Shown piece by piece: positions 43,008-58,161 of a DNA stretch of 64,000 nucleotides. The stretch covers positions 62,001 to 126,000 of IMG/VR virus record IMGVR_UViG_3300033049_000066; one strand, written 5' to 3'. Within the stretch, counting starts at the first letter, position 1; each line of letters opens with the position of its first letter. The position numbers and the translations under genes were made by a program. The notes beneath the pieces are model-generated. The model was not told where the DNA came from. It searched no databases and was given only the letters and a program-made list of their open reading frames with translations.

Positions 43008-44600
43008 ATGAAAGATAAAATAAATTATAACCTAACCGATAAACAAGATGATTACGCCTTGTTCTTACCGGCAATTTCGTCATTTTATTCGACGTACATT
43101 GGCAAGCAGCAAACCGATCCGAATTATGTACCGGCGAGTAGGATGCCCGCCGGTATTCCAGATATGGAAATGATGAACTTCTTTAATAACCAAAAAGGAC
43201 TATTTAAATATCGTTGGGGCTTATACAGCGCAGGACATGCCAACTTAGATTTAACTAAAGAAGTGCCCAAGGAAGATATGATCCGCAAACGCAGCAGTGA
43301 CACTCTATTACTAGCTGACTCAGGCGGGTTTCAAATTGCGAAGGGTGTTTGGGAAGGTGAGTGGAATAACCCAAACTGTCCAAAAGCTGAAAAGTACAGA
43401 AGTACCGTGCTAAAGTGGTTATGTAGTATTAGTGATTACAGCATGACACTTGATATACCAACCTGGACGTTTACAAATCCTGAGTCGGCGAAAAAATCCG
43501 GCATTTACAGCTATGAAGATGCTGTGAGTGCTACACGGTACAATCACGAATACTTCATGAAGAATAGCACAGGTGATGCTAAATTCTTAAATGTTATGCA
43601 GGGTGGTAATCACACTGAGGCAGAAGCGTGGTACGAAGAAATGAAAGAGTTTAGTGATCCTACTAAACACGAGAAGTATTTTAGAGGCTGGGCGATGGGT
43701 GGTGCTAACATGGCCGACCCACACCTCGCCATTAAAAGAGTAGTAACATTGATACATGATGGCTTACTTGAAGAAGGCAAACAAGACTGGATGCATTTCT
43801 TAGGAACAAGTAAACTAGAATGGGCAGTGCTATTGACCGCTCTACAACGAGCAGTTCGAAGAACCCATAACAAAAACTTTACGATTAGTTTTGATTGTGC
43901 AAGTCCTTTTTTAGCTACTGCCAATGGACAGATATACCATGAGACCGTTACCCCGGACTATAGAAACTTAACTAATAACAATAAAAGCGGTAAATGGTCA
44001 TATCGGATGAGTCCCACTGCTGACAACAAACAATACGCGAATGATACTCGCATGTTCAGCCGTGGGACAGTTGCAGATGGAATACATGATATTTTTGAAG
44101 ATAGCCCCATAAGCGAGCATCTAACAATGAAAGATATATGTATATACGCACCTGGTGACCTAAACAAGATCGGCAAGGAAGGCCGAACTTCTTGGGATAG
44201 TTTCTCTTATGCACTAATGATGGGCCATAATGTTTGGCATCATATCAACAGTGTACAAGAAGCAAACCGCCAATACGATAATGGTTGTCTGCCTAAGATG
44301 TTAGTCGACGAGAAAACTGGTGTCACAATAACAAATATAATAGACGCCGTTTTCTCTACAAATATATTTGAAGAGCGACTGGAAATACTTGAAGTGTATT
44401 CTAAGTTCTTCATGGGTATCAGCGGTGCCCGAGGCATGGGCGGAAAGAAGGCAATCAATGCTGCCGCGAAATTTGACGCGATGTTTGATTTAGACATGAC
44501 ACAATCAGAATTGCTGGAAGAAGCGCATTTAATTATGCACCCAGTTAAAGCACCTACTAAAATAGCAGATGATACCAATCTGTTTGATTTTGGAGAATAA
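43008..44600 (+). CDS. dpdA: TGT-fold deazaguanine transglycosylase (DpdA-like)
   Basis: LADSGGFQ, TLDIP, VMQGG, GWAMGG, HFLG, SFDCASP; co-located with folE/queD/queE. Confidence 0.75.
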   Translation: MKDKINYNLTDKQDDYALFLPAISSFYSTYIGKQQTDPNYVPASRMPAGIPDMEMMNFFNNQKGLFKYRWGLYSAGHANLDLTKEVPKEDMIRKRSSDTLLLADSGGFQIAKGVWEGEWNNPNCPKAEKYRSTVLKWLCSISDYSMTLDIPTWTFTNPESAKKSGIYSYEDAVSATRYNHEYFMKNSTGDAKFLNVMQGGNHTEAEAWYEEMKEFSDPTKHEKYFRGWAMGGANMADPHLAIKRVVTLIHDGLLEEGKQDWMHFLGTSKLEWAVLLTALQRAVRRTHNKNFTISFDCASPFLATANGQIYHETVTPDYRNLTNNNKSGKWSYRMSPTADNKQYANDTRMFSRGTVADGIHDIFEDSPISEHLTMKDICIYAPGDLNKIGKEGRTSWDSFSYALMMGHNVWHHINSVQEANRQYDNGCLPKMLVDEKTGVTITNIIDAVFSTNIFEERLEILEVYSKFFMGISGARGMGGKKAINAAAKFDAMFDLDMTQSELLEEAHLIMHPVKAPTKIADDTNLFDFGE

Positions 44601-44601
44601 G

Positions 44602-44883
44602 ATGATAACAAATGTAAATGATCTAGTGGAATTTATGGAAGCTGAATCAATTGCATGGGCCCGTGATGAGAATGATACTAAAACAGATTCAGGGACCGGC
44701 GCCGGAATAAAAAGACAATGGGAAAACAGAGATACGTTTCCGTGTCCGATATATTACTTAGCAGGTAAAGAAATAGCTAGCGACCCGACTAAATCTGATG
44801 GCGAGCGGCGGATAATACTTGAGGTTAATATTGCATGGTTTGACGAAGATGGAAATGTAACAGATAAGCCTAATGGAACCTGA
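44602..44883 (+). CDS. hypothetical protein
   Basis: ATG after GGAG. Confidence 0.55.
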   Translation: MITNVNDLVEFMEAESIAWARDENDTKTDSGTGAGIKRQWENRDTFPCPIYYLAGKEIASDPTKSDGERRIILEVNIAWFDEDGNVTDKPNGT

Positions 44884-45085
44884 GGTTGACAAAATAAAAC
44901 GTGATGTGCTATCCGAAGCCGGCATCGCCTGGCATATTTTAAAATATCAAGCAGCGCCGAAAATGCGACTTGAAATGAGATGTTGTCACGATCCGGCTCG
45001 TAAACTTGGCGAACAGAATTATGTAGATTATATAGTAACTAACAAGCACAATGATGACATAAATTGGGATGAGAAATATGAATAG
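44873..45085 (+). CDS. hypothetical protein
   Basis: 70 aa ORF overlapping neighbours. Confidence 0.5.
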   Translation: MEPEVDKIKRDVLSEAGIAWHILKYQAAPKMRLEMRCCHDPARKLGEQNYVDYIVTNKHNDDINWDEKYE

Positions 45086-45602
45086 AGAATATGAAAATCA
45101 AGATCATAACGAAGACACAAACTTTTTCGTAGGGTACGAGGTCGAACATACGCCCGCACATAAGTTGAAAACCTTGTTTGTAGTTGGCATTCAGCCCCTC
45201 AGAGAAATATTGTCTAGAGCAAACGCGCTCGGATGTGTTGCAGTATATTTTGGAGCGAATATGAGTTTTAACGCTGCGACAAATGATGAGATTACTGAGT
45301 GGGTTAAGATGATAGATGCTGTGCTAATGCATCCGGATGATTTTTGGTGTACGCTCGACTTTGACGTTCGCTATAGTGAAGACATCGTACAGACAGTGTT
45401 AGTTGATAAGCCTAACTTTATTCCGATGATTAGTGTTAAGATCCCGTATGCCGGGCAAATGGGTTATAACGCAACAGTTAAAATTGATGACAAAGATTTT
45501 GAAGCAAGTAACCCAGGGGTGTGGTGTCATAAGTTACACAGTTTAATGGATCCGGACAAATACACCAACTGGAAAAAATACAAAGAAGATAAAATCATTT
45601 AA
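45069..45602 (+). CDS. hypothetical protein in the modification locus
   Basis: 177 aa; GYEVEHTP, YFGAN, KIDDKDF..SNPGVW. Confidence 0.7.
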   Translation: MRNMNREYENQDHNEDTNFFVGYEVEHTPAHKLKTLFVVGIQPLREILSRANALGCVAVYFGANMSFNAATNDEITEWVKMIDAVLMHPDDFWCTLDFDVRYSEDIVQTVLVDKPNFIPMISVKIPYAGQMGYNATVKIDDKDFEASNPGVWCHKLHSLMDPDKYTNWKKYKEDKII

Positions 45603-45612
45603 GGATAATATT

Positions 45613-45819
45613 ATGAGCAACATTGAAACAACAGAAGACACTAGTGAAATTTTAGAAACTCGGATTAAAATACCAATGCCAGCAAAAGAAGGCGAGTCAA
45701 TCCAGTACGTAGATCTAAAGTTTACGCGACCAAATGCCGACCATAATACACTTTGGACGTGCTGGGCAACAAACGAGTTTATTGCTGAAGCACTAGAAAT
45801 ATTCAACAACATTGCCTAA
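45613..45819 (+). CDS. hypothetical protein
   Basis: AAGGA RBS, 68 aa. Confidence 0.55.
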   Translation: MSNIETTEDTSEILETRIKIPMPAKEGESIQYVDLKFTRPNADHNTLWTCWATNEFIAEALEIFNNIA

Positions 45820-45823
45820 ATAG

Positions 45824-45852
45824 TTGACAATCCCTACTAACTACTATAAAAT
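45824..45852 (+). promoter_or_regulatory. sigma70-like promoter
   Basis: TTGACA-N17-TAAAAT. Confidence 0.7.
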
Positions 45853-45858
45853 ATAACT

Positions 45859-46290
45859 ATGAGAGACAGCATTAATATTGATGATCAACTTGCTAGCAGC
45901 CGGCGTAACAAAATTGTACAACGTACGGCTAACGCAGGAAAATCTATATGGGTTCGCTTCCAGCGTGAAGGCATCCATTGTTACCCAGCAGCAGCTACGG
46001 ATCCAAATTTAGCAGATGTTGCTTTCCTTGCTCACCCGCACCGCCACATTTTTCACTTTGAAGTACAGATAGCTGTTGTACACGATGATCGTGACATTGA
46101 ATTTATACAGTTTAAACGATGGCTTGAAAGTATGTTTGACGACAAGATTTTGCAATTAGACGAAAAATCATGTGAGATGATCTCCAATGATATGTTCGCT
46201 ATGATTGCAGAAAAATATCCCAACCGGGAGGTTATCATTAGCGTGAGCGAAGATGCCGAGAATGGATCATTGATCCATTATACATTATAA
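45859..46290 (+). CDS. T-fold QueD paralogue, DpdL-like (putative CDG decarboxylase)
   Basis: LAHPHRHIF fits LxxxHRHxF; SCEM and VSEDAENG T-fold ends. Confidence 0.65.
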   Translation: MRDSINIDDQLASSRRNKIVQRTANAGKSIWVRFQREGIHCYPAAATDPNLADVAFLAHPHRHIFHFEVQIAVVHDDRDIEFIQFKRWLESMFDDKILQLDEKSCEMISNDMFAMIAEKYPNREVIISVSEDAENGSLIHYTL

Positions 46291-46316
46291 TTTTTTAACT
46301 ACACAAGGAGCCTGCA

Positions 46317-46592
46317 ATGGCCTATAATAAGAAAAAGAAAAACCCACGTACCGAGCAAGTTTGGAAAGACCTTGACACCTACCGCGCATTTTGCGTGAGT
46401 CATGGTTATCGGTTTAACGAAAAGGACTTGTATAATATGCGTACATATCCTTTCCAGCAGTTTAACAAGTTCCGTAATGGAAAGAACTGTAAGAATCAAT
46501 GGGACTTTGATTTAAATCGATTCCACAGCAAGCCGGTTTATAAAGGTAAAGGTGGTGGATATAAAGGTAAAAAGCCTTTTGTGAACCGATAA
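46317..46592 (+). CDS. small basic hypothetical protein
   Basis: AAGGAG RBS, 91 aa. Confidence 0.65.
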   Translation: MAYNKKKKNPRTEQVWKDLDTYRAFCVSHGYRFNEKDLYNMRTYPFQQFNKFRNGKNCKNQWDFDLNRFHSKPVYKGKGGGYKGKKPFVNR

Positions 46593-46603
46593 GGAGATAT
46601 AAC

Positions 46604-47779
46604 ATGCGAAAACTAATTTATTGCGGTTTGGAAAGTTACGAAGGTCGCTACACTCTACAGTTACAAGACTGGAGTGAACGCGCCTTTAAGAAGCGTGGTA
46701 TCGACTACATTGTGGTGCCTGGACAGGAAATAGATAATACTAAATCCATCCAGGTCGGGCAGGTGCTTGATGCTCACGGGCGGTCATTCTTTAGTATGTC
46801 GCAGATGATGAATCTCGTACAGATGATGCGCAGTGGTGAGGTCACAGGAGAGGATTGTATTTTCTTTGAAGATATGTTCACTCCTGGCATTGAGTCACTG
46901 GGCTATATCATGAATCAGATCCCTGAGGTTGATAGGCCACAAATTTATGTACGTTGCCTAGCACAGCGAGTAGACCCCGATGATTTTGTTCATGTATGGG
47001 GCATGGACTGGATGTCAACGTATGAAAAAATGGTTAACGAATTGCCCAACGTACATGTACTTGCAACTAATGAAGAAATGATTGCTAACATGAAAATAGT
47101 TGGGTGGTCGGCACCACTGTATAACATTAGCGGACTAGCATTTGGCAAAGAAGAAGTACAGGAACGGGTTGGTGAAATTAGACCGTTTAACAAAAGAACA
47201 AACCGTGTAGTATTTGGCGCCAGATGGGACCAGGAAAAACAGCCCGATTTCTTTATGGATTTAGCTGAGCTGTACCATGACACCAGCATAGACCCAGCAA
47301 TCTTTACAATATGCCAAGGTGGGCCACTCCGTAGCAACAATCAAAAGTATATTGACCGGGCACGAAAATTACAAGAAGAAGGCAAACTTGAAATACTTGA
47401 AAATTTAAAGAAAAATGAGTACTACGAGGTCTTGAATGATAGCAGGGTGTTATTTAATTGTGCTTTGCAGGATTGGGTTAGTAACACAGTATCGGAAGCT
47501 GATACCTGTGGTGCGAACGTGTTGTATCCTGCGTACAGATCGTTTCCAGAAACATTTGCTAACGACGCATCACGGTTATACGTGCCGTGGAGCATGGACG
47601 ATGCCTATGAAAAATTAAGTCAGTTGTTAAACGCACCGAGCCCGAACATGGGCAAGATAAGTGATTGGACAAATGGTACTATTGATCGGTGTATTGATAT
47701 TATGGAAGGTAACGGTGAAGAATGGCTACGTGATGATATGCGTTACCGAGATCACATTGTTGATAGAAAATATAAATGA
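46604..47779 (+). CDS. GT-B fold glycosyltransferase
   Basis: FGARWDQEKQP, ALQDWVSNTVSEA, VLYPAYRSFPE (GT4-like C-terminal domain). Confidence 0.8.
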   Translation: MRKLIYCGLESYEGRYTLQLQDWSERAFKKRGIDYIVVPGQEIDNTKSIQVGQVLDAHGRSFFSMSQMMNLVQMMRSGEVTGEDCIFFEDMFTPGIESLGYIMNQIPEVDRPQIYVRCLAQRVDPDDFVHVWGMDWMSTYEKMVNELPNVHVLATNEEMIANMKIVGWSAPLYNISGLAFGKEEVQERVGEIRPFNKRTNRVVFGARWDQEKQPDFFMDLAELYHDTSIDPAIFTICQGGPLRSNNQKYIDRARKLQEEGKLEILENLKKNEYYEVLNDSRVLFNCALQDWVSNTVSEADTCGANVLYPAYRSFPETFANDASRLYVPWSMDDAYEKLSQLLNAPSPNMGKISDWTNGTIDRCIDIMEGNGEEWLRDDMRYRDHIVDRKYK

Positions 47780-48045
47780 TTGATCCAGATCTTACTCATT
47801 ATGGCGTATTCTTACAGGAGATACACTCTATTAGAGATACGCCTGATGAGTTATCAGCAACCACTACCATTACCATAAAAAGCACGGCGACTGCCACTAA
47901 TGTTAATGCAGAGCAATTGATACGTGACCTCGCTTTGATGAGCGCGGTGCGCGGAACTGCTGATCCAGCAGTAAAAGACGCGTTTGAAAAATTATTAACA
48001 ATAATGGCACTTACACAATCTACTAGCACAAGGCCACAATTTTAA
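47776..48045 (+). CDS. small protein, PAL-helix family
   Basis: ADPAVKDAFEKLLTIMAL. Confidence 0.6.
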   Translation: MIDPDLTHYGVFLQEIHSIRDTPDELSATTTITIKSTATATNVNAEQLIRDLALMSAVRGTADPAVKDAFEKLLTIMALTQSTSTRPQF

Positions 48046-48048
48046 AAT

Positions 48049-48330
48049 ATGAAAGACGTGAATGGCAAGTCGTTAAAACGTGAGCACTATATGCTCTTAA
48101 AGGACTTAGGAATAGAGATTGTTATGTACGACTTAAGAACGTATATCGAAAAAAATCAACACCATTACGGATTTGAAGTGCATGGATCTTTAACGACCGG
48201 TGTTGATTTTGACGAGATACTCGCCCTGTTAAGACTTATGAAATCAGCCACGAATACGTCGAATCCAGCTATCGTCGACGCACTTGATCGATTAAGACTA
48301 GTTATTGGAATAACAGATGGACATAACTGA
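48049..48330 (+). CDS. small protein, PAL-helix family
   Basis: SNPAIVDALDRLRLVIGI. Confidence 0.6.
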   Translation: MKDVNGKSLKREHYMLLKDLGIEIVMYDLRTYIEKNQHHYGFEVHGSLTTGVDFDEILALLRLMKSATNTSNPAIVDALDRLRLVIGITDGHN

Positions 48331-48574
48331 ACAAGAATTGTTTAAGAAGCTTGGAATTATTATTACCGGACTCCGATATGAGCATACTGGCATGCGAACT
48401 AAAAACGCCATGCTACTTAGATCTGGAACTTTTCTAATAGAAGATGAAAAGTTCGCTGAAAGTTGCAAACTAATCGAACTCATTGACGAAATTCATAAGT
48501 CAGCAAATCCAGCAATAAAGGAACAGCTTAATCACTTAATTACACTAATCGAATTAACAAAGGAAGAAAAATGA
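48317..48574 (+). CDS. small protein, PAL-helix family
   Basis: ANPAIKEQLNHLITLIEL. Confidence 0.6.
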   Translation: MDITEQELFKKLGIIITGLRYEHTGMRTKNAMLLRSGTFLIEDEKFAESCKLIELIDEIHKSANPAIKEQLNHLITLIELTKEEK

Positions 48575-49017
48575 ATAAATGGGATAAGCGATTCCTAGAT
48601 ATGGCGAAGTTGGTCTCAACTTGGTCGAAGGATCCGAGTACGCAAGTCGGTGCGGTAATTGTGCGGCCGGACAAAAGCGTAGCATCAGTTGGGTTCAACG
48701 GGTTCCCTATTGGCATGCCGGACAACGAAAAATTATACAATGATCGTGAGGAAAAGTACAGCAGAATTATTCATGCTGAGATGAATGCGTTAAACTTTTC
48801 GCAAGATGCTTCGCTTGCTGGTTATACATTATACTCATATCCATTTTTATCCTGTAACAGATGTTACCCACAAATTGTACAAGCCGGCATTACACGGATT
48901 GTGGCGCCAATATGCCCGGTGGCACTAGAAGAACGCTGGGGAGATGCATTTGCAAAAGTACGCGGTTACGCAACCGAGCACATAGGAATTACCGTAGATG
49001 AGGTCGACTATGAGTGA
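48571..49017 (+). CDS. dCMP deaminase
   Basis: WSKDPSTQVGAVIV, GFNG, HAEMNA, SCNRC. Confidence 0.92.
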   Translation: MNKWDKRFLDMAKLVSTWSKDPSTQVGAVIVRPDKSVASVGFNGFPIGMPDNEKLYNDREEKYSRIIHAEMNALNFSQDASLAGYTLYSYPFLSCNRCYPQIVQAGITRIVAPICPVALEERWGDAFAKVRGYATEHIGITVDEVDYE

Positions 49018-49222
49018 ATATCAGGCTATTGCTGCGGTTTTGTGCTCAGACATAGATATACTAGCGACCGTAGCAGAAATGGATTCATGGTCAAAGGATG
49101 ACCTTAAAGAACTAATATTTCGGTTAAAAAAGCAAAAGGATTTGCTCATAACGGATGACAAGCACCGAAAAATGCGTTATAATGCTATGCAAGCATTATT
49201 TAATACAGGACAGAACACATGA
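49010..49222 (+). CDS. hypothetical protein
   Basis: small ORF, GAGG RBS. Confidence 0.5.
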   Translation: MSEYQAIAAVLCSDIDILATVAEMDSWSKDDLKELIFRLKKQKDLLITDDKHRKMRYNAMQALFNTGQNT

Positions 49223-50202
49223 ATTTACGAGGACGGAAAATTTTAGTAACGGGCGGACGTGGCTACATTGGTAGCCACACAGCAAAGACGTTGATCGCTG
49301 CCGACGCAGAAGTTTTTATTATTGACAAAAGATATGTATCTAAGAACAAAGTAAAAGGTACGACACTTTATGGCATGGGTGACTACGACGACCCTGAGAT
49401 ACTTAATAATTTACGAGAGAAAGGTGTAGATGGAGTTGTGCATTGTGCTGGCACAAGCCTTGTCGGGCCTAGTGTTGACAATCCTAGCGAATATTATAAT
49501 AACAACGTAATAAGAACTATTCGTATGTTGGATCACTTGAAGGAATGGGATACACCACCATTTGTTGTATTCAGTAGCAGTGCCGCAGTATACGGAGAGC
49601 CATCCGAAGTACCAATCTTAGAAACCGCCGAGTTACGGGCGAAGTCACCATACGGTAATTCAAAACTAATGATTGAGCGTGTACTGCAGGATTACGAAAC
49701 TGCTTACGGTATTAGAAGTTGGTGTTTTCGATATTTCAATGCGGTAGGCGCAGCTATGCCAACATCAAACCTTGGGCCAGAGGAAGGTGATACGCATATA
49801 ATTCCTCGGATATTTGACGCGTATTACAATAACAAACCATTTAAATTATACGGTACCGGCTACAACACACCTGACGGTACTTGCATCCGCGATTATGTAC
49901 ACGTAGAGGACATTGCCACCGCGCATATGACAGCGTGTCATTATTTAGCCTCCGGAAATCAATCTAAGATTTATAATTTAGGTACCGGCACCGGATATAG
50001 CAACTCCGAAATACTTACAGCATTTACTAATATAATTGGCCCCGTTGATATACGAATTGAAGGACAACGCACCGGTGATCCAGATCAGCTCATAGCAAGC
50101 TCAAGTAAATTTACCGCCGACACTAAATGGCTTCCGCAGTTTAGTGACGTTACCACGATTTTAACCTCATACAGAGACTATTATGAAAAAAGAAATAACT
50201 GA
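49219..50202 (+). CDS. galE: UDP-glucose 4-epimerase-like SDR
   Basis: TGGRGYIGSH, SSSAAVYG, YGNSK, RYFN, DGTCIRDYVHVED. Confidence 0.9.
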   Translation: MNLRGRKILVTGGRGYIGSHTAKTLIAADAEVFIIDKRYVSKNKVKGTTLYGMGDYDDPEILNNLREKGVDGVVHCAGTSLVGPSVDNPSEYYNNNVIRTIRMLDHLKEWDTPPFVVFSSSAAVYGEPSEVPILETAELRAKSPYGNSKLMIERVLQDYETAYGIRSWCFRYFNAVGAAMPTSNLGPEEGDTHIIPRIFDAYYNNKPFKLYGTGYNTPDGTCIRDYVHVEDIATAHMTACHYLASGNQSKIYNLGTGTGYSNSEILTAFTNIIGPVDIRIEGQRTGDPDQLIASSSKFTADTKWLPQFSDVTTILTSYRDYYEKRNN

Positions 50203-50818
50203 TTACGCTAACCCTTTTGACGCCAACGATGAATTTGAAAAAGTATTAGGTGAGTTCACCGGTGCGAAAGGGGTCATTGCTACTGACAGTTGTACACATG
50301 CGGTTGAGCTTGGGCTACGTTGGTCAATGCCTAAAATGTACGCAACGATACCGCCGCACGTACATCACACCATCCCAATGACATTGAAAAAGCTTGGCAT
50401 TGAATACATGTTTTCTGAGGATGACTGGGAGAATGAACACAGAATACAAGGCTCCACCGTGTACACTTCAGCCAAGCATCTGTCTAAGGATATGTTCCAG
50501 ACAGAAAATCCAAACCAGCTGAAAATATTGTGCGTATCATTTGCTGACGATGCCGCACTAGCGATCGGCCATGGTGGCGCAATATTAACAAACGACAAGA
50601 AAGCTTATAACTGGCTTAAACTAGCAGCGTACGACGGCAGGGATCGTCAGGCTATTGACTTGTCAAAAGATAGTGACACTACAGATGGTTATCATTACGG
50701 CATGCGGCCATCGGATGCGTTAATTGGACTTGAGAAATTAGCAAACGGAGAAATTCTTGATCTTAGAGATCGGTATAAAGATTATTCCAATATGCAGGAG
50801 GTTTTGCTAAATAAGTAG
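50183..50818 (+). CDS. truncated DegT/DnrJ sugar aminotransferase-like protein lacking PLP-binding residues
   Basis: FEKVLGEFTG...DSCTHAVEL, GGAILTND, YDGR; SF..K lysine absent. Confidence 0.7.
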   Translation: MKKEITDYANPFDANDEFEKVLGEFTGAKGVIATDSCTHAVELGLRWSMPKMYATIPPHVHHTIPMTLKKLGIEYMFSEDDWENEHRIQGSTVYTSAKHLSKDMFQTENPNQLKILCVSFADDAALAIGHGGAILTNDKKAYNWLKLAAYDGRDRQAIDLSKDSDTTDGYHYGMRPSDALIGLEKLANGEILDLRDRYKDYSNMQEVLLNK

Positions 50819-51040: not shown

Positions 51041-51070
51041 TTGACATAATATGTCAATCTCTGCTATACT
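51041..51070 (+). promoter_or_regulatory. promoter with a palindromic operator-like site over the -35
   Basis: TTGACATA-A-TATGTCAA; TTGACA-N18-TATACT with TG extension. Confidence 0.65.
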
Positions 51071-51123
51071 ATTAGTAGAAAAGTTACTAGCAGAAGCTAA
51101 CTAGCACATAAACAGGAGTACAA

Positions 51124-51807
51124 ATGAGTTTCAATAAAATAAAAACAAATCCAGAGCTGGGGCACGAAATTGCTAAGCATCTTGAAAAAATAGGTGTACA
51201 AACACCAATGAAAGACAACGGTCTAGATCGGACAACAAAAATTGATATTATTACACAAAAAATGACCGATATTATGACAACGTTAGGGCTTGATCTAACC
51301 GATGACAGCTTAATGGATACACCAAAACGTGTGGCAAAAATGTACGTTAACGAAATATTTTGGGGGCTAGATGCAGACGCATTTCCAAAATGTACCGCGG
51401 TAGAAAACAAAATGAATTACGATGCTATGGTTGTAGAACGTAACATTAATGTTCAGTCAAATTGCGAACATCACTTTGTTGTAATTGATGGTTTCGCAAC
51501 CGTCGCGTACATTCCGGGAAAAACTGTAATTGGTCTTAGTAAGATTAATCGTGTAGTTGAATACTTCGCGAAGCGACCACAAATACAAGAACGACTAACG
51601 GCGCAAATTTATTATGCACTAGCGTATATACTAAACACAGAAGATGTTGGTGTTATTATTGACGCCCAGCATTTTTGTGTAAAATCAAGGGGCGTCGAAG
51701 ATGTAGGTAGTAGCACCGTCACTAGTAAATTAGGTGGCGCATTTAAAAACGATCCAGCAACTAGAGCTGAATTCCTTGCAATTTTTAACAACAACGGTAA
51801 TCATTAA
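51124..51807 (+). CDS. folE: GTP cyclohydrolase I
   Basis: DTPKRVAKMY, SNCEHHF, GLSKINR, RPQIQERLT, HFCVKSRGV. Confidence 0.96.
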   Translation: MSFNKIKTNPELGHEIAKHLEKIGVQTPMKDNGLDRTTKIDIITQKMTDIMTTLGLDLTDDSLMDTPKRVAKMYVNEIFWGLDADAFPKCTAVENKMNYDAMVVERNINVQSNCEHHFVVIDGFATVAYIPGKTVIGLSKINRVVEYFAKRPQIQERLTAQIYYALAYILNTEDVGVIIDAQHFCVKSRGVEDVGSSTVTSKLGGAFKNDPATRAEFLAIFNNNGNH

Positions 51808-51809
51808 TT

Positions 51810-52464: not shown

Positions 52465-52657
52465 AATTTTCGTGCAATGTAAATTGTTCGGCCTGCACGA
52501 TTGGACCTGTGCTAGAGAACAAGGCATTCCCGCCACCCAGGATCAGATCTCCGGCGGAGTTCAAGGTTTTACTAATTATGCGAAACTGTATTGTAAGGAT
52601 TGCGGTACGATTAGCAGGCTGTCACAAAGACAGATTGATGATGTCTTTAAACGTTAA
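52448..52657 (+). CDS. small Cys/His protein (DUF1660-like CxLFGxHxW...CxxCG)
   Basis: CKLFGLHDW...CKDCG. Confidence 0.5.
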   Translation: MLTKIKIFVQCKLFGLHDWTCAREQGIPATQDQISGGVQGFTNYAKLYCKDCGTISRLSQRQIDDVFKR

Positions 52658-52658
52658 A

Positions 52659-52732
52659 GTCTGCGTAGCTAAGAGGCCTAGCAAGGGATTTTAAATCTCT
52701 GCACGTGGGTTCGACCCCCACCGCAGGCACCA
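52659..52732 (+). tRNA. tRNA with UUA anticodon (ochre-suppressor type), CCA encoded
   Basis: acceptor GTCTGCG/CGCAGGC, D-arm GCT/AGC, anticodon stem AGGGA/TCTCT with loop TTTTAAA, T-arm GTGGG-TTCGACC-CCCAC, ACCA end. Confidence 0.85.
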
Positions 52733-52779
52733 AATATTATACTAACATTAATCACTCATTAATCACTTCAGGAACTACA

Positions 52780-53484
52780 ATGAATCAAGATATTAAAGAA
52801 CAATTTTTGCGTGATACTAAAAATCACACCATGGAGGTCCTGCACGAAGATGGACTGTATCGTCACCTAAGATTTACAAAAGGTGGCTCACAGTGCTATC
52901 GCTTCGACATCCATACCTGGCCTGGATTTTTATGTATTTGTCAAGACATGGGAACTTACGTTTTTAGTCGCACACCCGACATGTTTGATTTCTTCCGGCT
53001 GAAGGACAATGACTGGAGCAAAAAGCATATTATCAACACGGGGTACTGGGCAGAAAAGTTACAAGCGGTAGATCGTGACTCGGCGCGAGGTGATGGTAGC
53101 GGCGCGACGGAATTCTCGCAAGAAAAATTTGCCGAGCACGTAAAGGAAGAATATGACAATTTCTGCGAAGGGCTAGCGGACCATGATGAAGACGAACTTA
53201 CAGAAGCGTTTGACGATGACCGCTCGATGAAATCACAGCTTGCGGAATTGTGGGAATGTCTTGAATCGGAGGTGATTGCGCAGTCTTACGATGGGCAACT
53301 TAGAGCGTATGATGCGGCGATGGGATTTGAGTGGCAAGACGATAACGGCAACCTCGCGTTCGACATGCATGACTTTTGGGATCATAACTGCACGGAATAT
53401 ACATTTCACTTTATTTGGTTGCTACACGCAATCGTGTACGGAATTGGGGAATACGATAAACTGAATTTAGTAAATGATACCTAA
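52780..53484 (+). CDS. hypothetical phage protein
   Basis: AGGA RBS; the track start at 52705 lies inside the tRNA, so the start was moved. Confidence 0.7.
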   Translation: MNQDIKEQFLRDTKNHTMEVLHEDGLYRHLRFTKGGSQCYRFDIHTWPGFLCICQDMGTYVFSRTPDMFDFFRLKDNDWSKKHIINTGYWAEKLQAVDRDSARGDGSGATEFSQEKFAEHVKEEYDNFCEGLADHDEDELTEAFDDDRSMKSQLAELWECLESEVIAQSYDGQLRAYDAAMGFEWQDDNGNLAFDMHDFWDHNCTEYTFHFIWLLHAIVYGIGEYDKLNLVNDT

Positions 53485-53656
53485 TTCCAAATTTTCAAAT
53501 TATGAAGTATTCGTACAAGAGGTAATAATTAAATTCATTACCGAATGCGATGATCCAACTGAAATACGATGTATTGCTGAATTTTACAGAGTTGATTTAG
53601 ATCAATTTAAGATTGATCATTATGAAGAAATACTATTTGCGTTATTGAAGAAATGA
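53474..53656 (+). CDS. hypothetical protein
   Basis: 60 aa ORF. Confidence 0.45.
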   Translation: MIPNSKFSNYEVFVQEVIIKFITECDDPTEIRCIAEFYRVDLDQFKIDHYEEILFALLKK

Positions 53657-53699
53657 TGTTATAATACAGTATGCGTAAACAAATTATTAGGAGTATTAT

Positions 53700-54293
53700 A
53701 TGAAGTGGACAATAGATAAAAGTTTTGACTGGTGCTATGGTCACCGCGTACATAATCAGTCGTTGAATGCAGATTTCACCGGCGCGGACGGTGCCTGCCT
53801 CGCATGTAGACATTTACACGGTCATCAAGGACAGCTTAAGGTTATGCTAGAGGGCGATGAACTAATCCGTGGAATGGTCACGGATTTTAAACATCTGGGC
53901 TGGATGAAAACGTTCATAGACGATGTCTTAGATCATAAGTTCATCATGGACATCAATGATCCTCTGTTACCACACGAGGTACCGGATTACTACGGAAATG
54001 CGATTGCGACTAGCGACAGTCACATTGCAGCAGGCGGGCTGCTGCTGAGTAGATGTACAGAATATCCCGAGGGGTACTGGACGCCACGCTTAGATTTGCT
54101 ACCATCCGACACGATACAGGCCGTCCGTGAAAAATATGAAGGCATTATATTCGTTGATTTCGTACCGACCTCAGAGAACTTGGCAGCGTGGTTGCTTGGC
54201 ATAGCACAGAAAAAGATGAAGGAACTAGATGTTAAGGTGGTAGCCGTAGAATTTTGGGAGACCCCAAAGAGCCATTGCAGGGTGGAAATATAA
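53700..54293 (+). CDS. queD: 6-carboxytetrahydropterin synthase
   Basis: CYGHRV, CRHLHGH, GMVTDF, LDHKF, PTSENLA, WETP. Confidence 0.92.
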   Translation: MKWTIDKSFDWCYGHRVHNQSLNADFTGADGACLACRHLHGHQGQLKVMLEGDELIRGMVTDFKHLGWMKTFIDDVLDHKFIMDINDPLLPHEVPDYYGNAIATSDSHIAAGGLLLSRCTEYPEGYWTPRLDLLPSDTIQAVREKYEGIIFVDFVPTSENLAAWLLGIAQKKMKELDVKVVAVEFWETPKSHCRVEI

Positions 54294-54328
54294 TCCATAT
54301 CAGACTAAATACTTGATAGGAGAGTATA

Positions 54329-54688
54329 ATGTTTGATCGTTACACGAAAAATTTCAGAGAAAAACCATTTGCGACTATAAGCGGTACTGTCGCATTTGCG
54401 GTCGGCGTAGTTGGATTAATTACAGCTGGCAATCAAGCTGCGGAACATGTTGGTGAATACTTTGTTTCGGCGGCAGAATTAGAGATCGCCAAGACAGAAG
54501 TGATCAGCGTTATACGCAAGGAAGCAATTATAACAAGAAATGTAATTGTTGGAGAAATTTTAGTGCGAAAGTCTGAATTGCAACGTGAACTTGAAGATAC
54601 AAAAGATGCCGGGCGTATCAGCTCAATCTTAGAAGATATCACGGTGCTGAACCACCGACTAAATAAGATAAGAGGAATAGATGAATGA
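54329..54688 (+). CDS. single-TM late protein
   Basis: CTAAATA at 54305, AGGAG RBS, N-terminal TM plus coiled coil. Confidence 0.6.
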   Translation: MFDRYTKNFREKPFATISGTVAFAVGVVGLITAGNQAAEHVGEYFVSAAELEIAKTEVISVIRKEAIITRNVIVGEILVRKSELQRELEDTKDAGRISSILEDITVLNHRLNKIRGIDE

Positions 54689-54960
54689 AGTACATTATAC
54701 TCGCAACATTATTATTTATTAGCGCAGCCCAAGCTGGCGGTTATAAAAATCAATCTATTCAGCAAGAGCTTCGGAGTACTCCTGAAATGTCAGCTCGATG
54801 CAACGCAAATATTAATTACTTCGAGCGAAAAGTTTTTAAGTACAGCACAAAAGTTCATATTGGAACCGGAGAAAAAATAAAACTCCGGTACTACAGAGAT
54901 GAACTAGAATCATGGATAGATTACTGCGTCAATGATGCGGCAGATCCAGACTTTCAATAA
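54685..54960 (+). CDS. small secreted protein with two Cys
   Basis: signal peptide MKYIILATLLFISAAQA. Confidence 0.6.
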   Translation: MKYIILATLLFISAAQAGGYKNQSIQQELRSTPEMSARCNANINYFERKVFKYSTKVHIGTGEKIKLRYYRDELESWIDYCVNDAADPDFQ

Positions 54961-55052
54961 ATTAACTATAGTCCACAAAGAATATCCACAGTAACAACTA
55001 CTTAGAATGAATTATTAACATTCATTACGGCTCATTGATTTAAAAATAGAGG

Positions 55053-55081
55053 TTGACAGAACTAATATAATATCGTATAAT
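55053..55081 (+). promoter_or_regulatory. sigma70-like early promoter
   Basis: AGAGG-TTGACA-N17-TATAAT; same AGAGGTTGAC context as the repeat promoters. Confidence 0.8.
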
Positions 55082-55102
55082 ATAACCATAGGAGAATTTT
55101 TA

Positions 55103-55624
55103 ATGAATAAAACTTATTTAAATTACAATGACGTGGAAGCGCATTGTCTAGAAATCGCACAAAATATTTCGCGTGACGATTGGCACCCGGATTATATCAT
55201 CGGCTTGACCCGTGGTGGGCTGCTACCGGCAACGCTGCTAAGTCATCGACTAAACGTGCCGATGTCCTCACTGGATGTAAGTTTGCGTGATGGCGGCATG
55301 GAATCGTGTAGTAATTGCTGGATGGCCGAAGACGCGTTCAATGGAAAAAATTTACTAATTGTCGACGATATAAATGATACAGGTGCGACACTACAGTGGA
55401 TTGTAGATGACTGGATGTCGAGCAATTTGCCCAACGATCCCAAATGGGGGACGATTTTTGGTGACAACGCTCGCTTCGCCACTATTGTAAATAATGCCGG
55501 TAGTGATTTTAAAAACGTTTCCTACAGTGGGCTACAAATTAATAAAGATGAAGATGATTCCTGGATTGTTTTTCCGTGGGAGGAGTGGCAGCCAGCAATA
55601 GGAGAGAAAGATGGCGAAGATTAA
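55103..55624 (+). CDS. type I phosphoribosyltransferase (xanthine/guanine PRT-like)
   Basis: IIGLTRGGLLPA, LLIVDDINDTGATL, WIVFPWE. Confidence 0.9.
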   Translation: MNKTYLNYNDVEAHCLEIAQNISRDDWHPDYIIGLTRGGLLPATLLSHRLNVPMSSLDVSLRDGGMESCSNCWMAEDAFNGKNLLIVDDINDTGATLQWIVDDWMSSNLPNDPKWGTIFGDNARFATIVNNAGSDFKNVSYSGLQINKDEDDSWIVFPWEEWQPAIGEKDGED

Positions 55625-56489
55625 AGTAGCAGAGGTGTTTCATAGCCTCCAGGGTGAAGGATTACACACCGGCATACCGTCAGTTTTCGTAAGGACATTC
55701 GGATGCAATTTTCAATGTGCTGGATTTGGTATGCCGCCAGGTAAGAAAACAACTGAGCCGGATGAAATTGCTGCGAACTTTTTAAAAGAAAACCCAAGCA
55801 CGACATATACTGGCCTTCCACTTGCTTTGACTGGGTGTGACAGCTATGCAAGCTGGCACCCAAAGTTTAAATCACTTAGCCCGGTACAGGCAGTTACAGA
55901 AATTGTCACCAGGATGGAAGATACACGCAAAGAAGATAGTGGCATGCGGTACAACAACGGCAGTACGCATCTTGTCATAACTGGTGGTGAACCGCTACTG
56001 GGTTGGCAGAGAGCATATCCTGAATTATTTGATGAGGTAGCCAACAAAGGCTATCGTCACATAACCTTTGAGACCAACGGAACACAGAAAATCACAGATA
56101 AATTTGCAGATTATTTACTGCTGCGACAGATTAAAAAAACAAAGGATGAGAACACAATCACGTTCAGTGTTAGTCCCAAGTTGTCGTGCTCCGGCGAACT
56201 ACAAGAAGAAGCACTACGGCCTGAAATTGTAGCAAGCTATCAAAAATTTGGTACAGTGTACTTAAAATTTGTAGTCGCAAGCAATGATGACATGGCTGAT
56301 GTTGTAACTTTTGTAAATGCCTATAAGGAAGCTGGTTGGGATGGTGAAGTTTATCTTATGCCATGCGGTGGCGACACTGAATTATATAATTTAAATGCCC
56401 CTGAGGTCGCCAAGCTTGCGATGACATACGGCATGAGATACAGCGCACGGCTACAGGTTGACCTTTGGAAAAATGCCCACGGCACCTAA
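55611..56489 (+). CDS. queE: 7-carboxy-7-deazaguanine synthase (radical SAM)
   Basis: EVFHSLQGEG, RTFGCNFQC...CDS, ITGGEPL, ETNGT, VSPK, RLQV. Confidence 0.92.
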   Translation: MAKIKVAEVFHSLQGEGLHTGIPSVFVRTFGCNFQCAGFGMPPGKKTTEPDEIAANFLKENPSTTYTGLPLALTGCDSYASWHPKFKSLSPVQAVTEIVTRMEDTRKEDSGMRYNNGSTHLVITGGEPLLGWQRAYPELFDEVANKGYRHITFETNGTQKITDKFADYLLLRQIKKTKDENTITFSVSPKLSCSGELQEEALRPEIVASYQKFGTVYLKFVVASNDDMADVVTFVNAYKEAGWDGEVYLMPCGGDTELYNLNAPEVAKLAMTYGMRYSARLQVDLWKNAHGT

Positions 56490-58151: not shown

Positions 58152-58161
58152 AGGAGCAACC

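What the first reader, a model, noticed from the sequence alone, without database searches (positions are those of the whole stretch)
43008..56489. 7-deazaguanine DNA-modification locus without queC, interleaved with sugar-transfer genes: possible new hypermodified base
Seen: a TGT/DpdA-like gene (43008), a second T-fold protein with LxxxHRHxF (45859), folE, queD and queE, but no queC, queF or gat-queC in the window. Known: FolE-QueD-QueE make CDG from GTP and QueC is needed for preQ0; as I recall, LxxxHRHxF T-fold proteins (DpdL) are linked to decarboxylation of CDG to 7-deazaguanine. Also seen: a GT-B glycosyltransferase behind the same promoter as the DpdL-like gene, GalE, a DegT-like protein, and a guanine-type PRTase overlapping queE. 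Inference: the genome carries dDG/dCDG, perhaps supplied at nucleotide level through the PRTase, and possibly further glycosylated. I do not recognise that combination as characterised.
Basis: partly seen in the sequence, partly recalled or inferred. Interest (0 to 1): 0.85.

Follow-up and report, generated by a model that had tools for sequence, protein, structure and literature searches.

The report
Deazaguanine DNA-modification locus with linked glycosyltransferase
This jumbo phage carries the known queC-less pathway for replacing guanine in its DNA with 7-deazaguanine, tied to a sugar-transferring enzyme, a purine-salvage enzyme and an unknown protein that recur in unrelated phages and that no paper I found explains, so the final DNA base may be a new sugar-bearing one.

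Summary
Window 43008-56489 encodes FolE, QueD and QueE. It also encodes a DpdL-type T-fold protein (LAHPHRHIF), a 530-aa TGT-fold protein, a GT4-type glycosyltransferase, a GalE equivalog, a short DegT-like protein and a purine-type PRTase that overlaps queE by 14 nt. I found no queC, queF or gat-queC in the 64-kb window.

The core (FolE-QueD-QueE-DpdL plus a transglycosylase, no QueC) is the published dDG pathway of Cellulophaga phage phiST. That part is known.

Three things appear to be new:
- The transglycosylase belongs to a very large, unannotated TGT-fold family that is distinct from DpdA3.
- The glycosyltransferase family sits beside DpdL in at least six cultured phage lineages (ACP17, PA5oct-like, Phosso, BUDD/X1, BCSR5, BUCT-ZZ01). 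It is also present in 78 of 80 related viral contigs.
- A 177-aa protein of unknown fold occurs only in such phages.

The PRTase family recurs in phages whose guanine is fully replaced.

The glycosyltransferase most likely modifies the deazaguanine base or the DNA that carries it, but no chemistry was tested. The rest of the 293-kb genome could not be searched for queC.

Verdict: a new variant of a known kind; interest 0.7.

The parts
38679..41435 (+). Family-B (T4 gp43-like) DNA polymerase. This is context: the modification locus sits directly downstream in the replication module.
   Evidence: Pfam DNA_pol_B and DNA_pol_B_exo1. Closest cultured relative is Sinorhizobium phage Phosso, 46%. Present upstream in 72 of 80 related loci.
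43008..44600 (+). DpdA-like DNA/RNA guanine transglycosylase of a separate, unannotated TGT-fold family (called 'DpdAx' here).
   Evidence: AF2 model pLDDT 89.7. Foldseek top 23 hits are all TGTs, E 1e-6 to 2e-4. D104-S105-G107, D149, H263 and D296 are invariant or nearly so in 52 diverse homologues. hhalign to immuto DpdA3 gives only 25% probability. Homologues lie beside que genes in PA5oct and Vibrio phage 2.275.O.
45069..45602 (+). Conserved 177-aa protein of unknown fold ('o177'), found only in phages with DpdL and the GT.
   Evidence: Present in 75 of 80 related loci. Only 13 of 50,697 phage records carry it, all PA5oct-like or ACP17. hhalign 99.2% to the ACP17 gene just upstream of its dpdA. 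23 invariant columns, many acidic. Confident model but no PDB match.
45824..45852 (+). Sigma-70-like promoter (TTGACA-17-TAAAAT) in front of DpdL, the small ORF and the GT.
   Evidence: Consensus scan, 11 of 12 matches. This is a consensus match only.
45859..46290 (+). DpdL (QueD-like T-fold; proposed CDG decarboxylase).
   Evidence: Motif FLAHPHRHIF. phrog_17812, E 6e-32. 52.6% identical to ACP17 DpdL and 29.5% to phiST DpdL. Aligned with six other DpdL proteins and two QueD proteins.
46317..46592 (+). Small conserved ORF between DpdL and the GT; function unknown.
   Evidence: tblastn hit in 48 of 80 related loci, always in this position. No Pfam hit.
46604..47779 (+). GT-B (GT4-like) glycosyltransferase, genomically linked to DpdL.
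   Evidence: PF00534 above the gathering score. Profile hits GT4 structures 7ec1 and 6eji. Invariant LExxExRYT, R207, E211-K212, E298. Homologues beside DpdL in ACP17, PA5oct, Phosso, BUDD, X1, BCSR5 and BUCT-ZZ01.
48571..49017 (+). dCMP deaminase. Probably an unrelated nucleotide-metabolism insertion.
   Evidence: PF00383, E 1e-16. Found in this neighbourhood in only 1 of 80 relatives.
49219..50202 (+). UDP-glucose 4-epimerase (GalE), the likely supplier of the GT's donor sugar.
   Evidence: TIGR01179 equivalog, 301.7 bits against a cut-off of 262.3. An SDR gene in this position in 74 of 80 relatives, in at least two divergent forms.
50183..50818 (+). Short DegT-like protein (211 aa) that lacks the PLP lysine in this genome.
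   Evidence: PF01041 partial match. Lys aligned to Ala against KdnA 5k8b. 30 relatives keep SFGxxK. Present in 33 of 80 loci.
51124..51807 (+). GTP cyclohydrolase I (FolE).
   Evidence: PF01227, E 2e-61. NF006824, 317 bits.
52659..52732 (+). tRNA with anticodon UUA (ochre suppressor type), embedded in the locus. Probably not part of the pathway.
   Evidence: ARAGORN. Rfam RF00005, 51.1 bits, E 1e-8.
53700..54293 (+). QueD (CPH4 synthase) with a roughly 50-aa insertion.
   Evidence: PF01242, E 1e-24. phrog_2389. CRHLHGH motif. Insertion visible in the alignment.
55103..55624 (+). Purine (6-oxopurine-type) phosphoribosyltransferase, preceded by a perfect sigma-70-like promoter at 55053-55081.
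   Evidence: PF00156. Top PDB hits are purine, XG and HG PRTases. PRPP motif LLIVDDINDTGAT. Homologues in phiST, immuto_2-6A, BUCT-ZZ01, Brevundimonas phages and PA5oct EST35_0321. Promoter.
55611..56489 (+). QueE (CDG synthase, radical SAM).
   Evidence: phrog_2076, E 7e-57. QueE NCBIfam models are the top hits.

Best explanation
The locus is a queC-independent, DpdL-type 7-deazaguanine DNA-modification system. It sits in the replication module of an uncultured jumbo phage of about 293 kb.

Proposed steps:
1. FolE, QueD and QueE convert GTP to 7-carboxy-7-deazaguanine (CDG). This follows from gene content and established enzymology.
2. DpdL removes or replaces the carboxyl group to give 7-deazaguanine. 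This is inferred from the published proposal and has not been shown biochemically for any DpdL.
3. The 530-aa TGT-fold enzyme, which keeps the TGT catalytic motifs, exchanges guanine in phage DNA for this base. This is inferred from its fold, its motifs and its linkage to que genes in three other phage groups.
4. A GT4-type glycosyltransferase adds a hexose to the deazaguanine, either to the free base before insertion or to the base already in DNA. It is fed here by a phage GalE, so the donor is probably UDP-galactose. This step rests only on conserved gene linkage and on the precedent of a GT-B enzyme that glycosylates a 7-deazapurine base in huimycin biosynthesis.
5. The purine PRTase most likely recycles the guanine released by transglycosylation, or scavenged from host DNA, into GMP and then GTP to feed FolE.
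6. The 177-aa protein is an additional, still unexplained component of the system.
For: - Pathway genes and motifs are present.
- No QueC, QueF or Gat in the window, nor within 10 kb either side of the GT in any of 80 related loci.
- DpdL is homologous to the ACP17 and phiST proteins. PMC10516641 reports 100% dDG in phiST with FolE, QueD, QueE, DpdL and DpdA3 but no QueC.
- The transglycosylase has a TGT fold and TGT motifs. Its homologues sit next to QueE in PA5oct and next to QueF, QueC, Gat and FolE in Vibrio phage 2.275.O.
- GT-DpdL linkage: 18 of the 23 phage records that hold this GT family also hold DpdL, out of 50,697 records. The two genes are adjacent or within about 3 kb in ACP17, PA5oct, Phosso, BUDD, X1, BCSR5 and BUCT-ZZ01. 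DpdL is in 78 of 80 IMG/VR loci selected by the GT.
- The GT keeps the nucleotide-sugar-binding R/K and E residues across all lineages.
- phiST makes plain dDG without this GT, so the GT is not needed for dDG itself.
- PMC10516641 reports that ACP17 dpdA plus dpdL in E. coli gave no dDG and says other enzymes may be required. ACP17 encodes both the GT and o177 between or beside those two genes.
- PA5oct DNA resists enzymes whose sites contain G and is targeted by nucleases that sense hypermodified bases (PMC12191111).
- HuiG is a glycosyltransferase acting on a 7-deazapurine base (bioRxiv 10.64898/2026.04.15.718813).
Against: - No chemical data exist for this phage or for any phage carrying the GT.
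- 7-deazaguanine has no hydroxyl group. A sugar would have to go on N2, on a ring carbon or on a still unknown intermediate, and no hydroxylase was recognised in the locus.
- Several of the lineages that carry the GT belong to the broad T4-like/jumbo group (this phage's polymerase is T4 gp43-like and BUCT-ZZ01 is in Kyanoviridae). They carry the module near their DNA polymerase or primase-helicase genes, so they are not fully independent observations.
- GalE accompanies the GT only in this phage's own family.
- The DegT-like protein lacks its catalytic lysine here.
- DpdL's decarboxylase activity is itself unproven.
- Only 64 kb of the 293-kb genome could be searched for queC.
Confidence: 0.55

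Rival explanations
1. The system is an ordinary dDG system like that of phiST. The DNA carries plain 7-deaza-2'-deoxyguanosine. The GT, GalE and DegT-like genes glycosylate something else, such as another base, a virion protein or a host surface polymer, or they have a non-catalytic role.
For: phiST reaches 100% dDG with no GT. Vibrio phage VP1 is reported as fully substituted with 7-deazaguanine. 7-deazaguanine offers no obvious acceptor group. GalE is not linked to the GT outside this phage family.
Against: The GT family is almost confined to phages that carry DpdL, and it lies between or beside dpdA, dpdL and queE in differently arranged clusters with two different DpdA types. No hydroxymethyl-pyrimidine synthase was seen in the ORFs of the locus and its flanks that I scanned.
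Confidence: 0.25
2. The modification is made before replication, at the nucleotide level. As TubE does in tubercidin biosynthesis, the PRTase couples CDG or DG to PRPP. The resulting 7-deaza-GMP analogue is then phosphorylated, reduced to the deoxy form and incorporated by the phage DNA polymerase. The TGT-fold enzyme only patches residual G or has another role. This rival concerns the route of incorporation and is compatible with either answer on glycosylation.
For: The PRTase overlaps queE and has its own strong promoter. Homologous PRTases occur in phages with complete G replacement: phiST, and immuto_2-6A, where it sits between queE and folE near an NTP pyrophosphatase, a thymidylate kinase and the DNA polymerase. 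They also occur next to folE, RNR and a dNMP kinase in Brevundimonas phages. TubE is a precedent for a PRTase that uses CDG (PMC6112128).
Against: Sequence places the enzyme with guanine, xanthine and hypoxanthine PRTases. One shared substrate, guanine, explains its presence in phages that make different final bases (DG in phiST, formyl-preQ1 in immuto) more simply than a different substrate in each. Every such phage also keeps a DpdA, which PMC10516641 takes as evidence for post-replicative insertion. No dGTP-destroying enzyme was recognised in the window.
Confidence: 0.3
3. queC (and possibly queF or gat-queC) lies elsewhere in the 293-kb genome, or is borrowed from the host. In that case the DNA carries dPreQ0, dADG, dPreQ1 or dG+ rather than dDG.
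For: Only 22% of the genome was examined. In Vibrio phage 2.275.O the same transglycosylase family is paired with QueC, QueF and Gat, so the family is not tied to DG.
Against: DpdL is reported in phages that lack QueC. There is no QueC in the window or within 10 kb either side of the GT in 80 related loci. In the Vibrio phage, by contrast, queC is in the cluster.
Confidence: 0.08
4. The TGT-fold enzyme modifies tRNA, either the phage's or the host's, rather than DNA.
For: Its nearest solved structures are tRNA-guanine transglycosylases. A tRNA gene lies inside the locus.
Against: The locus lies in the replication module, next to the DNA polymerase, as in phiST, ACP17, BUDD and Phosso. PA5oct, which has the same enzyme family, shows G-dependent resistance of its DNA to restriction enzymes. 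The tRNA in the locus has a UUA anticodon, which has no G at position 34.
Confidence: 0.05

Closest known systems
Cellulophaga phage phiST dDG system (FolE-QueD-QueE-DpdL-DpdA3; Cui, Hutinet et al., NAR 2023, PMC10516641)
   Same: CDG synthesis genes are present and queC is absent. Both have a DpdL with LxxxHRHxF, a TGT-superfamily transglycosylase and a location next to the DNA polymerase. A homologous PRTase is also encoded in phiST.
   Different: The transglycosylase is not a DpdA3 (hhalign 25%). It belongs to a 500-aa family that Pfam does not annotate. phiST has no GT, o177 or GalE. This DpdL is only 29.5% identical to the phiST protein and groups with the ACP17 type (52.6%).
Acidovorax phage ACP17 and Pseudomonas jumbo phage PA5oct clusters (modification not determined)
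   Same: Both share the DpdL clade, the GT family and the o177 family. PA5oct also shares the same DpdA family (36% identity), a PRTase-like gene before queE, and the order queE - o134 homologue - RNase H.
   Different: ACP17 uses the other DpdA type. Neither has GalE or the DegT-like gene near the cluster. The literature treats these GT and o177 genes as hypothetical. PA5oct is known only to have 'a modified G' (PMC12191111).
Tubercidin and huimycin biosynthesis in actinomycetes
   Same: Both start from FolE, QueD and QueE making a 7-deazapurine. TubE is a PRTase acting on CDG in a queC-less pathway. HuiG is a GT-B glycosyltransferase that puts a sugar on a 7-deazapurine base (PMC6112128; bioRxiv 10.64898/2026.04.15.718813).
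   Different: Those pathways make free secondary metabolites. They lack a TGT/DpdA, and tubercidin biosynthesis uses a UbiD-type decarboxylase rather than a T-fold DpdL. I did not test homology of the phage PRTase to TubE or of the phage GT to HuiG.
Phage T4 alpha- and beta-glucosyltransferases acting on 5-hydroxymethylcytosine
   Same: A phage GT-B enzyme uses a UDP-sugar to decorate an already non-canonical base in the major groove.
   Different: The base is different (C rather than G) and the acceptor there is a hydroxymethyl group. No sequence similarity was detected: there was no PDB hit for the single sequence, and the profile hits GT4 enzymes instead.

Membership tests
DpdA / TGT superfamily (guanine transglycosylase) | TGT-type (beta/alpha)8 barrel fold | tested here: met
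   AF2 model pLDDT 89.7, pTM 0.87. The best 23 Foldseek PDB hits are all bacterial, eukaryotic or archaeal TGTs, E 1e-6 to 2e-4, TM about 0.5 on the target.
DpdA / TGT superfamily (guanine transglycosylase) | Catalytic and substrate Asp motifs (DSGGFQ, LD-x-P, FDC-x-x-P in Z. mobilis TGT; this correspondence comes from my own knowledge) | tested here: met
   ADSGGFQ (D104, S105, G107 invariant), TLDIP (D149 at least 90%), HFLG (H263 invariant) and SFDCASPF (D296 invariant) in 52 homologues down to 26% identity.
DpdA / TGT superfamily (guanine transglycosylase) | Genomic linkage to 7-deazaguanine synthesis genes | tested here: met
   Seen in the window, in PA5oct (QueE 3 kb downstream), in Vibrio phage 2.275.O (QueF, QueC, Gat and FolE adjacent) and in 76 of 80 IMG/VR loci.
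DpdA / TGT superfamily (guanine transglycosylase) | Exchange of guanine in DNA for a 7-deazaguanine base | not testable with these tools
   This needs an enzyme assay or mass spectrometry of the DNA.
DpdA3 subfamily | Sequence or profile similarity to DpdA3 (phiST, immuto_2-6A) | tested here: not met
   hhalign of the 52-sequence profile against immuto_2-6A DpdA3 gives probability 24.8%, with only the HxLG and D-x-S-x-P segments aligned. tblastn with DpdA3 finds nothing in the window or in the 80 loci. Length is 530 aa against 264 aa.
DpdL (proposed CDG decarboxylase) | LxxxHRHxF in place of the QueD motif CxxxHGH | tested here: met
   LAHPHRHIF. Aligned with six other DpdL proteins and two QueD proteins. 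The motif definition is from PMC10516641.
DpdL (proposed CDG decarboxylase) | Homology to the phiST and ACP17 proteins named DpdL | tested here: met
   52.6% identity to ACP17 (E 3e-34) and 29.5% to phiST (E 3e-7).
DpdL (proposed CDG decarboxylase) | Occurs with FolE, QueD, QueE and DpdA, and without QueC | tested here: inconclusive
   Met for the 64-kb window and for the 80 related loci. The remaining 229 kb or so of the source contig could not be fetched.
DpdL (proposed CDG decarboxylase) | Decarboxylation of CDG to DG | not testable with these tools
   This has not been shown for any family member. Heterologous expression failed in PMC10516641.
GT-B glycosyltransferase, GT4-like (PF00534) | Profile match above the curated threshold, and conserved donor-binding residues | tested here: met
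   PF00534 at 28.7 bits against a cut-off of 26.4. The profile hits GT4 structures 7ec1 (E 3e-5) and 6eji. R207, E211, K212 and E298 are invariant across six lineages. Donor and acceptor were not tested.
tRNA-queuosine mannosyltransferase (QTMAN)-like | QTMAN_N domain (PF12038) | tested here: not met
   QTMAN clusters appear only among language-model feature neighbours (score 0.97, 172-177 shared features). Pfam scanning at E up to 0.01 gave no PF12038 hit. This is a lead only.
UDP-glucose 4-epimerase GalE | Equivalog-level HMM score | tested here: met
   TIGR01179 at 301.7 bits against a cut-off of 262.3.
DegT/DnrJ/EryC1 sugar aminotransferase | Full-length fold-type I domain with the PLP-binding lysine (SFxxxK) | tested here: not met
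   211 aa against a profile of about 360 positions, and only positions 165-236 match well. Lys is replaced by Ala in the window, while 30 relatives keep it.
6-oxopurine phosphoribosyltransferase | PRTase domain with the PRPP-binding acidic loop; nearest relatives are purine PRTases | tested here: met
   PF00156, E 1e-15. LLIVDDINDTGAT. PDB hits 1vdm, 4z1o, HGPRTs and XGPRTs. Base specificity (guanine, DG or CDG) cannot be tested here.
FolE / QueD / QueE (CDG synthesis) | Family HMM matches and signature motifs | tested here: met
   FolE NF006824, 317 bits. QueD PF01242, E 1e-24, with CxxxHGH. QueE phrog_2076, E 7e-57, with the QueE NCBIfam models as top hits below their cut-offs.

The most novel reading that the evidence does not exclude
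A widespread group of uncultured jumbo phages, together with cultured phages such as PA5oct, ACP17 and BUCT-ZZ01, replaces guanine with a previously undescribed sugar-bearing 7-deazaguanine, for example a hexosyl-7-deazaguanine. The base would be made by a four-part module of a DpdA, DpdL, a dedicated GT4-type glycosyltransferase and a 177-aa enzyme of new fold. This would be the first glycosylated purine in any DNA. It would also explain why dpdA plus dpdL alone failed to produce dDG in E. coli.
Probability: 0.35. Interest if true: 0.9.

Novelty: new variant of a known kind. Interest (0 to 1): 0.7.

Why it matters
- 7-deazaguanine DNA modifications shield phages from restriction enzymes and CRISPR, and eight derivatives are known. 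None carries a sugar, and no glycosylated purine is known in DNA.
- The enzyme that makes dDG has never been reconstituted. The GT and o177, which travel with DpdL, are concrete candidates for the components the original authors said might be missing.
- The transglycosylase family here has thousands of metagenomic members and no annotation, so current surveys based on DpdA HMMs probably undercount deazaguanine-modified phages.
- The same module is present in PA5oct-like phages, which are studied for therapy against Pseudomonas aeruginosa and are targeted by nucleases that sense hypermodified DNA. Knowing the base would help explain their host range.
- The hypothesis can be tested at once on cultured phages by mass spectrometry.

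Tried and rejected
- Megablast of the 13.5-kb locus against 50,697 phage genomes gave no match, so there is no close cultured relative.
- phmmer and profile hmmsearch of the 530-aa protein against PDB sequences gave nothing useful. Only structure prediction followed by Foldseek revealed the TGT fold.
- Filing the transglycosylase as DpdA3 was rejected.
- I tested whether the 370-aa gene that follows the DpdAx homologue in Vibrio phage 2.275.O is the same GT. It is not.
- I tested whether the BUCT-ZZ01 447-aa protein is a DpdA. It is not. Its 416-aa neighbour is a DpdA of the other type.
- o177 gave no informative result. It has no Pfam, PHROG or NCBIfam hit, no significant PDB fold match, and only weak GT-A-like hints from the language-model atlas. 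hhalign to small neighbouring ORFs in PA5oct, BUDD, Phosso, ZZ01 and RHph_I1_18 was negative.
- The DegT-like ORF is not a broken gene. Relatives have the same length of about 200 aa, and the frames downstream are closed.
- Global TAA recoding is rejected, because TAA is the commonest stop codon.
- Fetching the whole source contig to search for queC failed. Only 8.7 kb was returned.
- Literature searches for a glycosyltransferase or PRTase role in phage deazaguanine DNA modification found none. PMC10516641 contains no word beginning with 'phosphoribosyl' or 'glycosyl', so neither a PRTase nor a glycosyltransferase is discussed there.

Full report
**What is in the sequence**

All genes of the region lie on the + strand, directly downstream of a T4-type family-B DNA polymerase (38679-41435). 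Family searches identify the following:

| Coordinates | Gene |
|---|---|
| 43008-44600 | 530-aa TGT-fold protein ("DpdAx") |
| 45069-45602 | conserved 177-aa protein ("o177") |
| 45859-46290 | DpdL-type T-fold protein |
| 46604-47779 | group-1 (GT4-like) glycosyltransferase |
| 48571-49017 | dCMP deaminase |
| 49219-50202 | GalE, at equivalog level |
| 50183-50818 | 211-aa DegT-like protein |
| 51124-51807 | FolE |
| 53700-54293 | QueD, with CxxxHGH and a roughly 50-aa insertion |
| 55103-55624 | purine-type PRTase |
| 55611-56489 | QueE |

- The PRTase overlaps queE by 14 nt.
- The 143-aa protein at 45859 carries FLAHPHRHIFHF.
- The 530-aa protein at 43008 matched nothing in Pfam, PHROGs or PDB sequences.
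- tblastn with phage QueC, QueF and Gat proteins finds none of them in the 64-kb window.
- The four best sigma-70-like sites of the region (11-12 of 12) lie immediately upstream of DpdL, GalE, FolE and the PRTase. The total number of such sites is not above chance.
The main correction is that the DegT-like protein is short and, in this genome, has alanine where the PLP lysine should be. All 30 relatives aligned keep the lysine.

**The transglycosylase**

It falls into 866 clusters at 50% identity. None carries a Pfam annotation.
- An alignment of 52 members down to 26% identity keeps D104-S105-G107 (ADSGGFQ), D149 (TLDIP), H263 (HFLG) and D296 (SFDCASPF).
- From my own knowledge, these correspond to the DSGGFQ, LD-x-P and FDC-x-x-P motifs that hold the substrate-binding and nucleophilic aspartates of Z. 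mobilis TGT.
- The AlphaFold model built on that alignment is confident (pLDDT 89.7). Its 23 best PDB matches are all tRNA-guanine transglycosylases (E about 1e-6).
- Cultured-phage homologues lie about 3 kb upstream of QueE in PA5oct-like Pseudomonas jumbo phages, and directly beside QueF, QueC, Gat and FolE in Vibrio phage 2.275.O.
- The protein is not a DpdA3. Profile comparison with the Flavobacterium phage immuto_2-6A DpdA3 gives 25% probability.
- A second, different DpdA type of about 420-440 aa is used by ACP17, BUDD and BUCT-ZZ01.

**What is already known**

- Cui, Hutinet et al. (NAR 2023, PMC10516641) showed that Cellulophaga phage phiST replaces all G by 2'-deoxy-7-deazaguanosine. 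phiST encodes FolE, QueD, QueE and DpdA3 but not QueC.
- They proposed the QueD paralogue DpdL, defined by LxxxHRHxF, as a CDG decarboxylase.
- The window's protein is 52.6% identical to ACP17 DpdL and 29.5% to phiST DpdL.
- The same paper reports that dpdL plus dpdA from phiST or ACP17 gave no dDG in E. coli, and suggests that other enzymes may be needed.
- That paper contains no word beginning with 'phosphoribosyl' or 'glycosyl', so it discusses neither a PRTase nor a glycosyltransferase.

**What goes beyond the published picture**

*The glycosyltransferase travels with DpdL.*
- Its family is marked by invariant LExxExRYT, R207, E211-K212 and E298.
- It is found in only 23 of 50,697 phage records, and 18 of those also carry DpdL.
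- It lies adjacent to DpdL, or within about 3 kb, in ACP17 (o177 - DpdA - GT - DpdL - QueE), PA5oct (DpdAx - GT - DpdL ... PRTase-like - QueE), Phosso (DpdL - GT), BUDD and X1 (GT - DpdA - DpdL - QueE), BCSR5, and the cyanophage BUCT-ZZ01.
- In BUCT-ZZ01 the order is QueE - PRTase - x - QueD - FolE - x - DpdA - DpdL - GT, and the GT is 69% identical to the window's.
- These clusters have different gene orders and two different DpdA types.
- In 80 IMG/VR contigs selected by the GT (about 70% identity), the counts are DpdL 78, DpdAx 76, o177 75, a GalE-like SDR 74, FolE 61, PRTase 38, QueE 37 and QueC 0. The PRTase and QueE counts are limited by the 10-kb flank. Gene order is conserved.
- Seven DpdL lineages lack the GT, including the phiST group, whose product is plain dDG. 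The GT is therefore not needed to make dDG, and where it is present it probably does something further.

*o177 is exclusive to these phages.*
- The 177-aa protein occurs in only 13 phage records, all PA5oct-like or ACP17.
- In ACP17 it sits just upstream of dpdA.
- It has 23 invariant columns, many of them acidic. Its model is confident but has no match in the PDB.

*The PRTase recurs in phages with fully replaced guanine.*
- Its homologues in cultured phages are in the phiST group (100% dDG) and in Flavobacterium phage immuto_2-6A (100% formyl-dPreQ1).
- In immuto_2-6A the gene sits between queE and folE, near an NTP pyrophosphatase, DpdA3, a thymidylate kinase and the DNA polymerase.
- Homologues also occur next to QueE in BUCT-ZZ01, next to folE, RNR and a dNMP kinase in Brevundimonas phages, and, weakly, just before QueE in PA5oct.

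**Mechanism**

- Steps 1-3 (GTP to CDG, CDG to DG, insertion into DNA by the TGT-fold enzyme) follow from gene content, the published model and the retained catalytic motifs. None of them is shown here.
- For the GT, I consider glycosylation of the deazaguanine the most likely role, either on the free base or in DNA. A phage GalE probably supplies UDP-galactose in this family. The SDR in that position varies between relatives, which would fit diversification of the sugar.
- A precedent exists in huimycin biosynthesis, where a GT-B enzyme transfers GlcNAc to a 7-deazapurine base (bioRxiv 10.64898/2026.04.15.718813).
- The weak point is chemical. 7-deazaguanine has no hydroxyl group, so the sugar would have to sit on N2, on the electron-rich pyrrole carbon, or on an intermediate that DpdL or o177 creates. 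I could not distinguish these possibilities.
- For the PRTase there are two readings.
  - It may recycle guanine into GMP and GTP for FolE. The guanine would be released stoichiometrically by transglycosylation or scavenged from host DNA. One substrate would then explain the enzyme's presence in phages with different final bases, and the sequence sits among guanine, xanthine and hypoxanthine PRTases.
  - It may convert DG or CDG to a nucleotide for pre-replicative incorporation, as TubE does with CDG in tubercidin biosynthesis (PMC6112128).
An assay would settle it.

**Limits**

- No chemistry was tested, here or in the literature, for any phage that carries the GT. PA5oct is only inferred to have a modified G, from restriction resistance and from its sensitivity to nucleases that sense hypermodified bases (PMC12191111).
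- Several of the GT-carrying lineages belong to the broad T4-like/jumbo group (this phage's polymerase is T4 gp43-like and BUCT-ZZ01 is in Kyanoviridae). They are not fully independent, although different DpdA types and gene orders argue against simple inherited synteny.
- The window is 64 kb of a 293,278-bp contig (IMGVR_UViG_3300033049_000066). The rest could not be fetched, so a distant queC is not excluded.
- The language-model atlas placed clusters named tRNA-queuosine mannosyltransferase among the GT's neighbours. Pfam did not confirm the QTMAN_N domain, so this remains a lead.

**Verdict**

- The dDG core is known.
- The distinct transglycosylase family, the GT and o177 companions of DpdL, and the recurrence of the PRTase in fully substituted phages are, as far as the searched literature shows, undescribed.
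- I rate the finding a new variant of a known kind, with interest 0.7.
- I give about one chance in three that the final DNA base is a new glycosylated 7-deazaguanine.

Noticed in passing
window 52659-52732 (+): A well-formed tRNA with anticodon UUA, which reads the UAA ochre stop codon. ARAGORN calls it 'tRNA-Stop', and Rfam scores it 51.1 bits (E 1e-8). It lies inside the locus. The GTG-start ORF 52705-53484 overlaps it, so that gene (phrog_4657, function unknown) probably starts at the ATG at 52780.
   Followed up: partly
window 47776-48045 | 48049-48330; 58108-58551 | 58552-58920; 25265-25669 | 25670-27931: These same-frame ORF pairs are each separated by a single TAA and could be read-through targets of the UUA tRNA. 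TAA is nevertheless the commonest stop codon of long + strand ORFs (45 TAA, 15 TGA, 8 TAG), so there is no genome-wide recoding.
   Followed up: partly
window 62581-63408 (+): A phage-encoded HhH-GPD (EndoIII/Ogg-like) DNA glycosylase (Pfam PF00730, E 2e-12). This is notable because host END nucleases use an inactive EndoIII domain to sense hypermodified phage bases.
   Followed up: no
window 50183-50818 and L008-L087: A family of half-size (about 200 aa) DegT-like proteins is conserved downstream of the GalE-like gene in 33 of 80 relatives. All 30 relatives aligned keep the SFGxxK lysine, while the window's copy has Ala there.
   Followed up: partly
L008-L087, position after the GT: The SDR gene after the GT comes in at least two forms. 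One is 312-349 aa and about 40% identical to the window's GalE. The other is 286-292 aa and only 30-34% identical. The sugar-nucleotide step may therefore differ between related phages.
   Followed up: no
L005 (immuto_2-6A), L006 (Brevundimonas StAshley), L007 (phiST), L003 (BUCT-ZZ01): Homologous purine PRTases recur in phages whose guanine is fully replaced. They sit inside or beside the que genes, and near dNMP kinase, RNR and an NTP pyrophosphatase. The 2023 paper on these phages does not mention this enzyme.
   Followed up: partly
window 48571-49017 (+): A dCMP deaminase is inserted between the GT and GalE. It is present in this neighbourhood in only 1 of 80 relatives.
   Followed up: partly
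L090 (Xanthomonas phage BUDD) 5885-6379: A 164-aa protein annotated as 'PAPS reductase family' (a PP-loop fold) lies between FolE and the GT in a DpdL cluster. It could be a truncated QueC-like ATPase. I did not examine it.
   Followed up: no
window 57747-58151 and 58917-59987: The order QueE - o134 homologue - RNase H/FEN is shared with PA5oct (EST35_0322, 0324, 0325). This points to distant common ancestry of the replication modules of these jumbo phages.
   Followed up: partly
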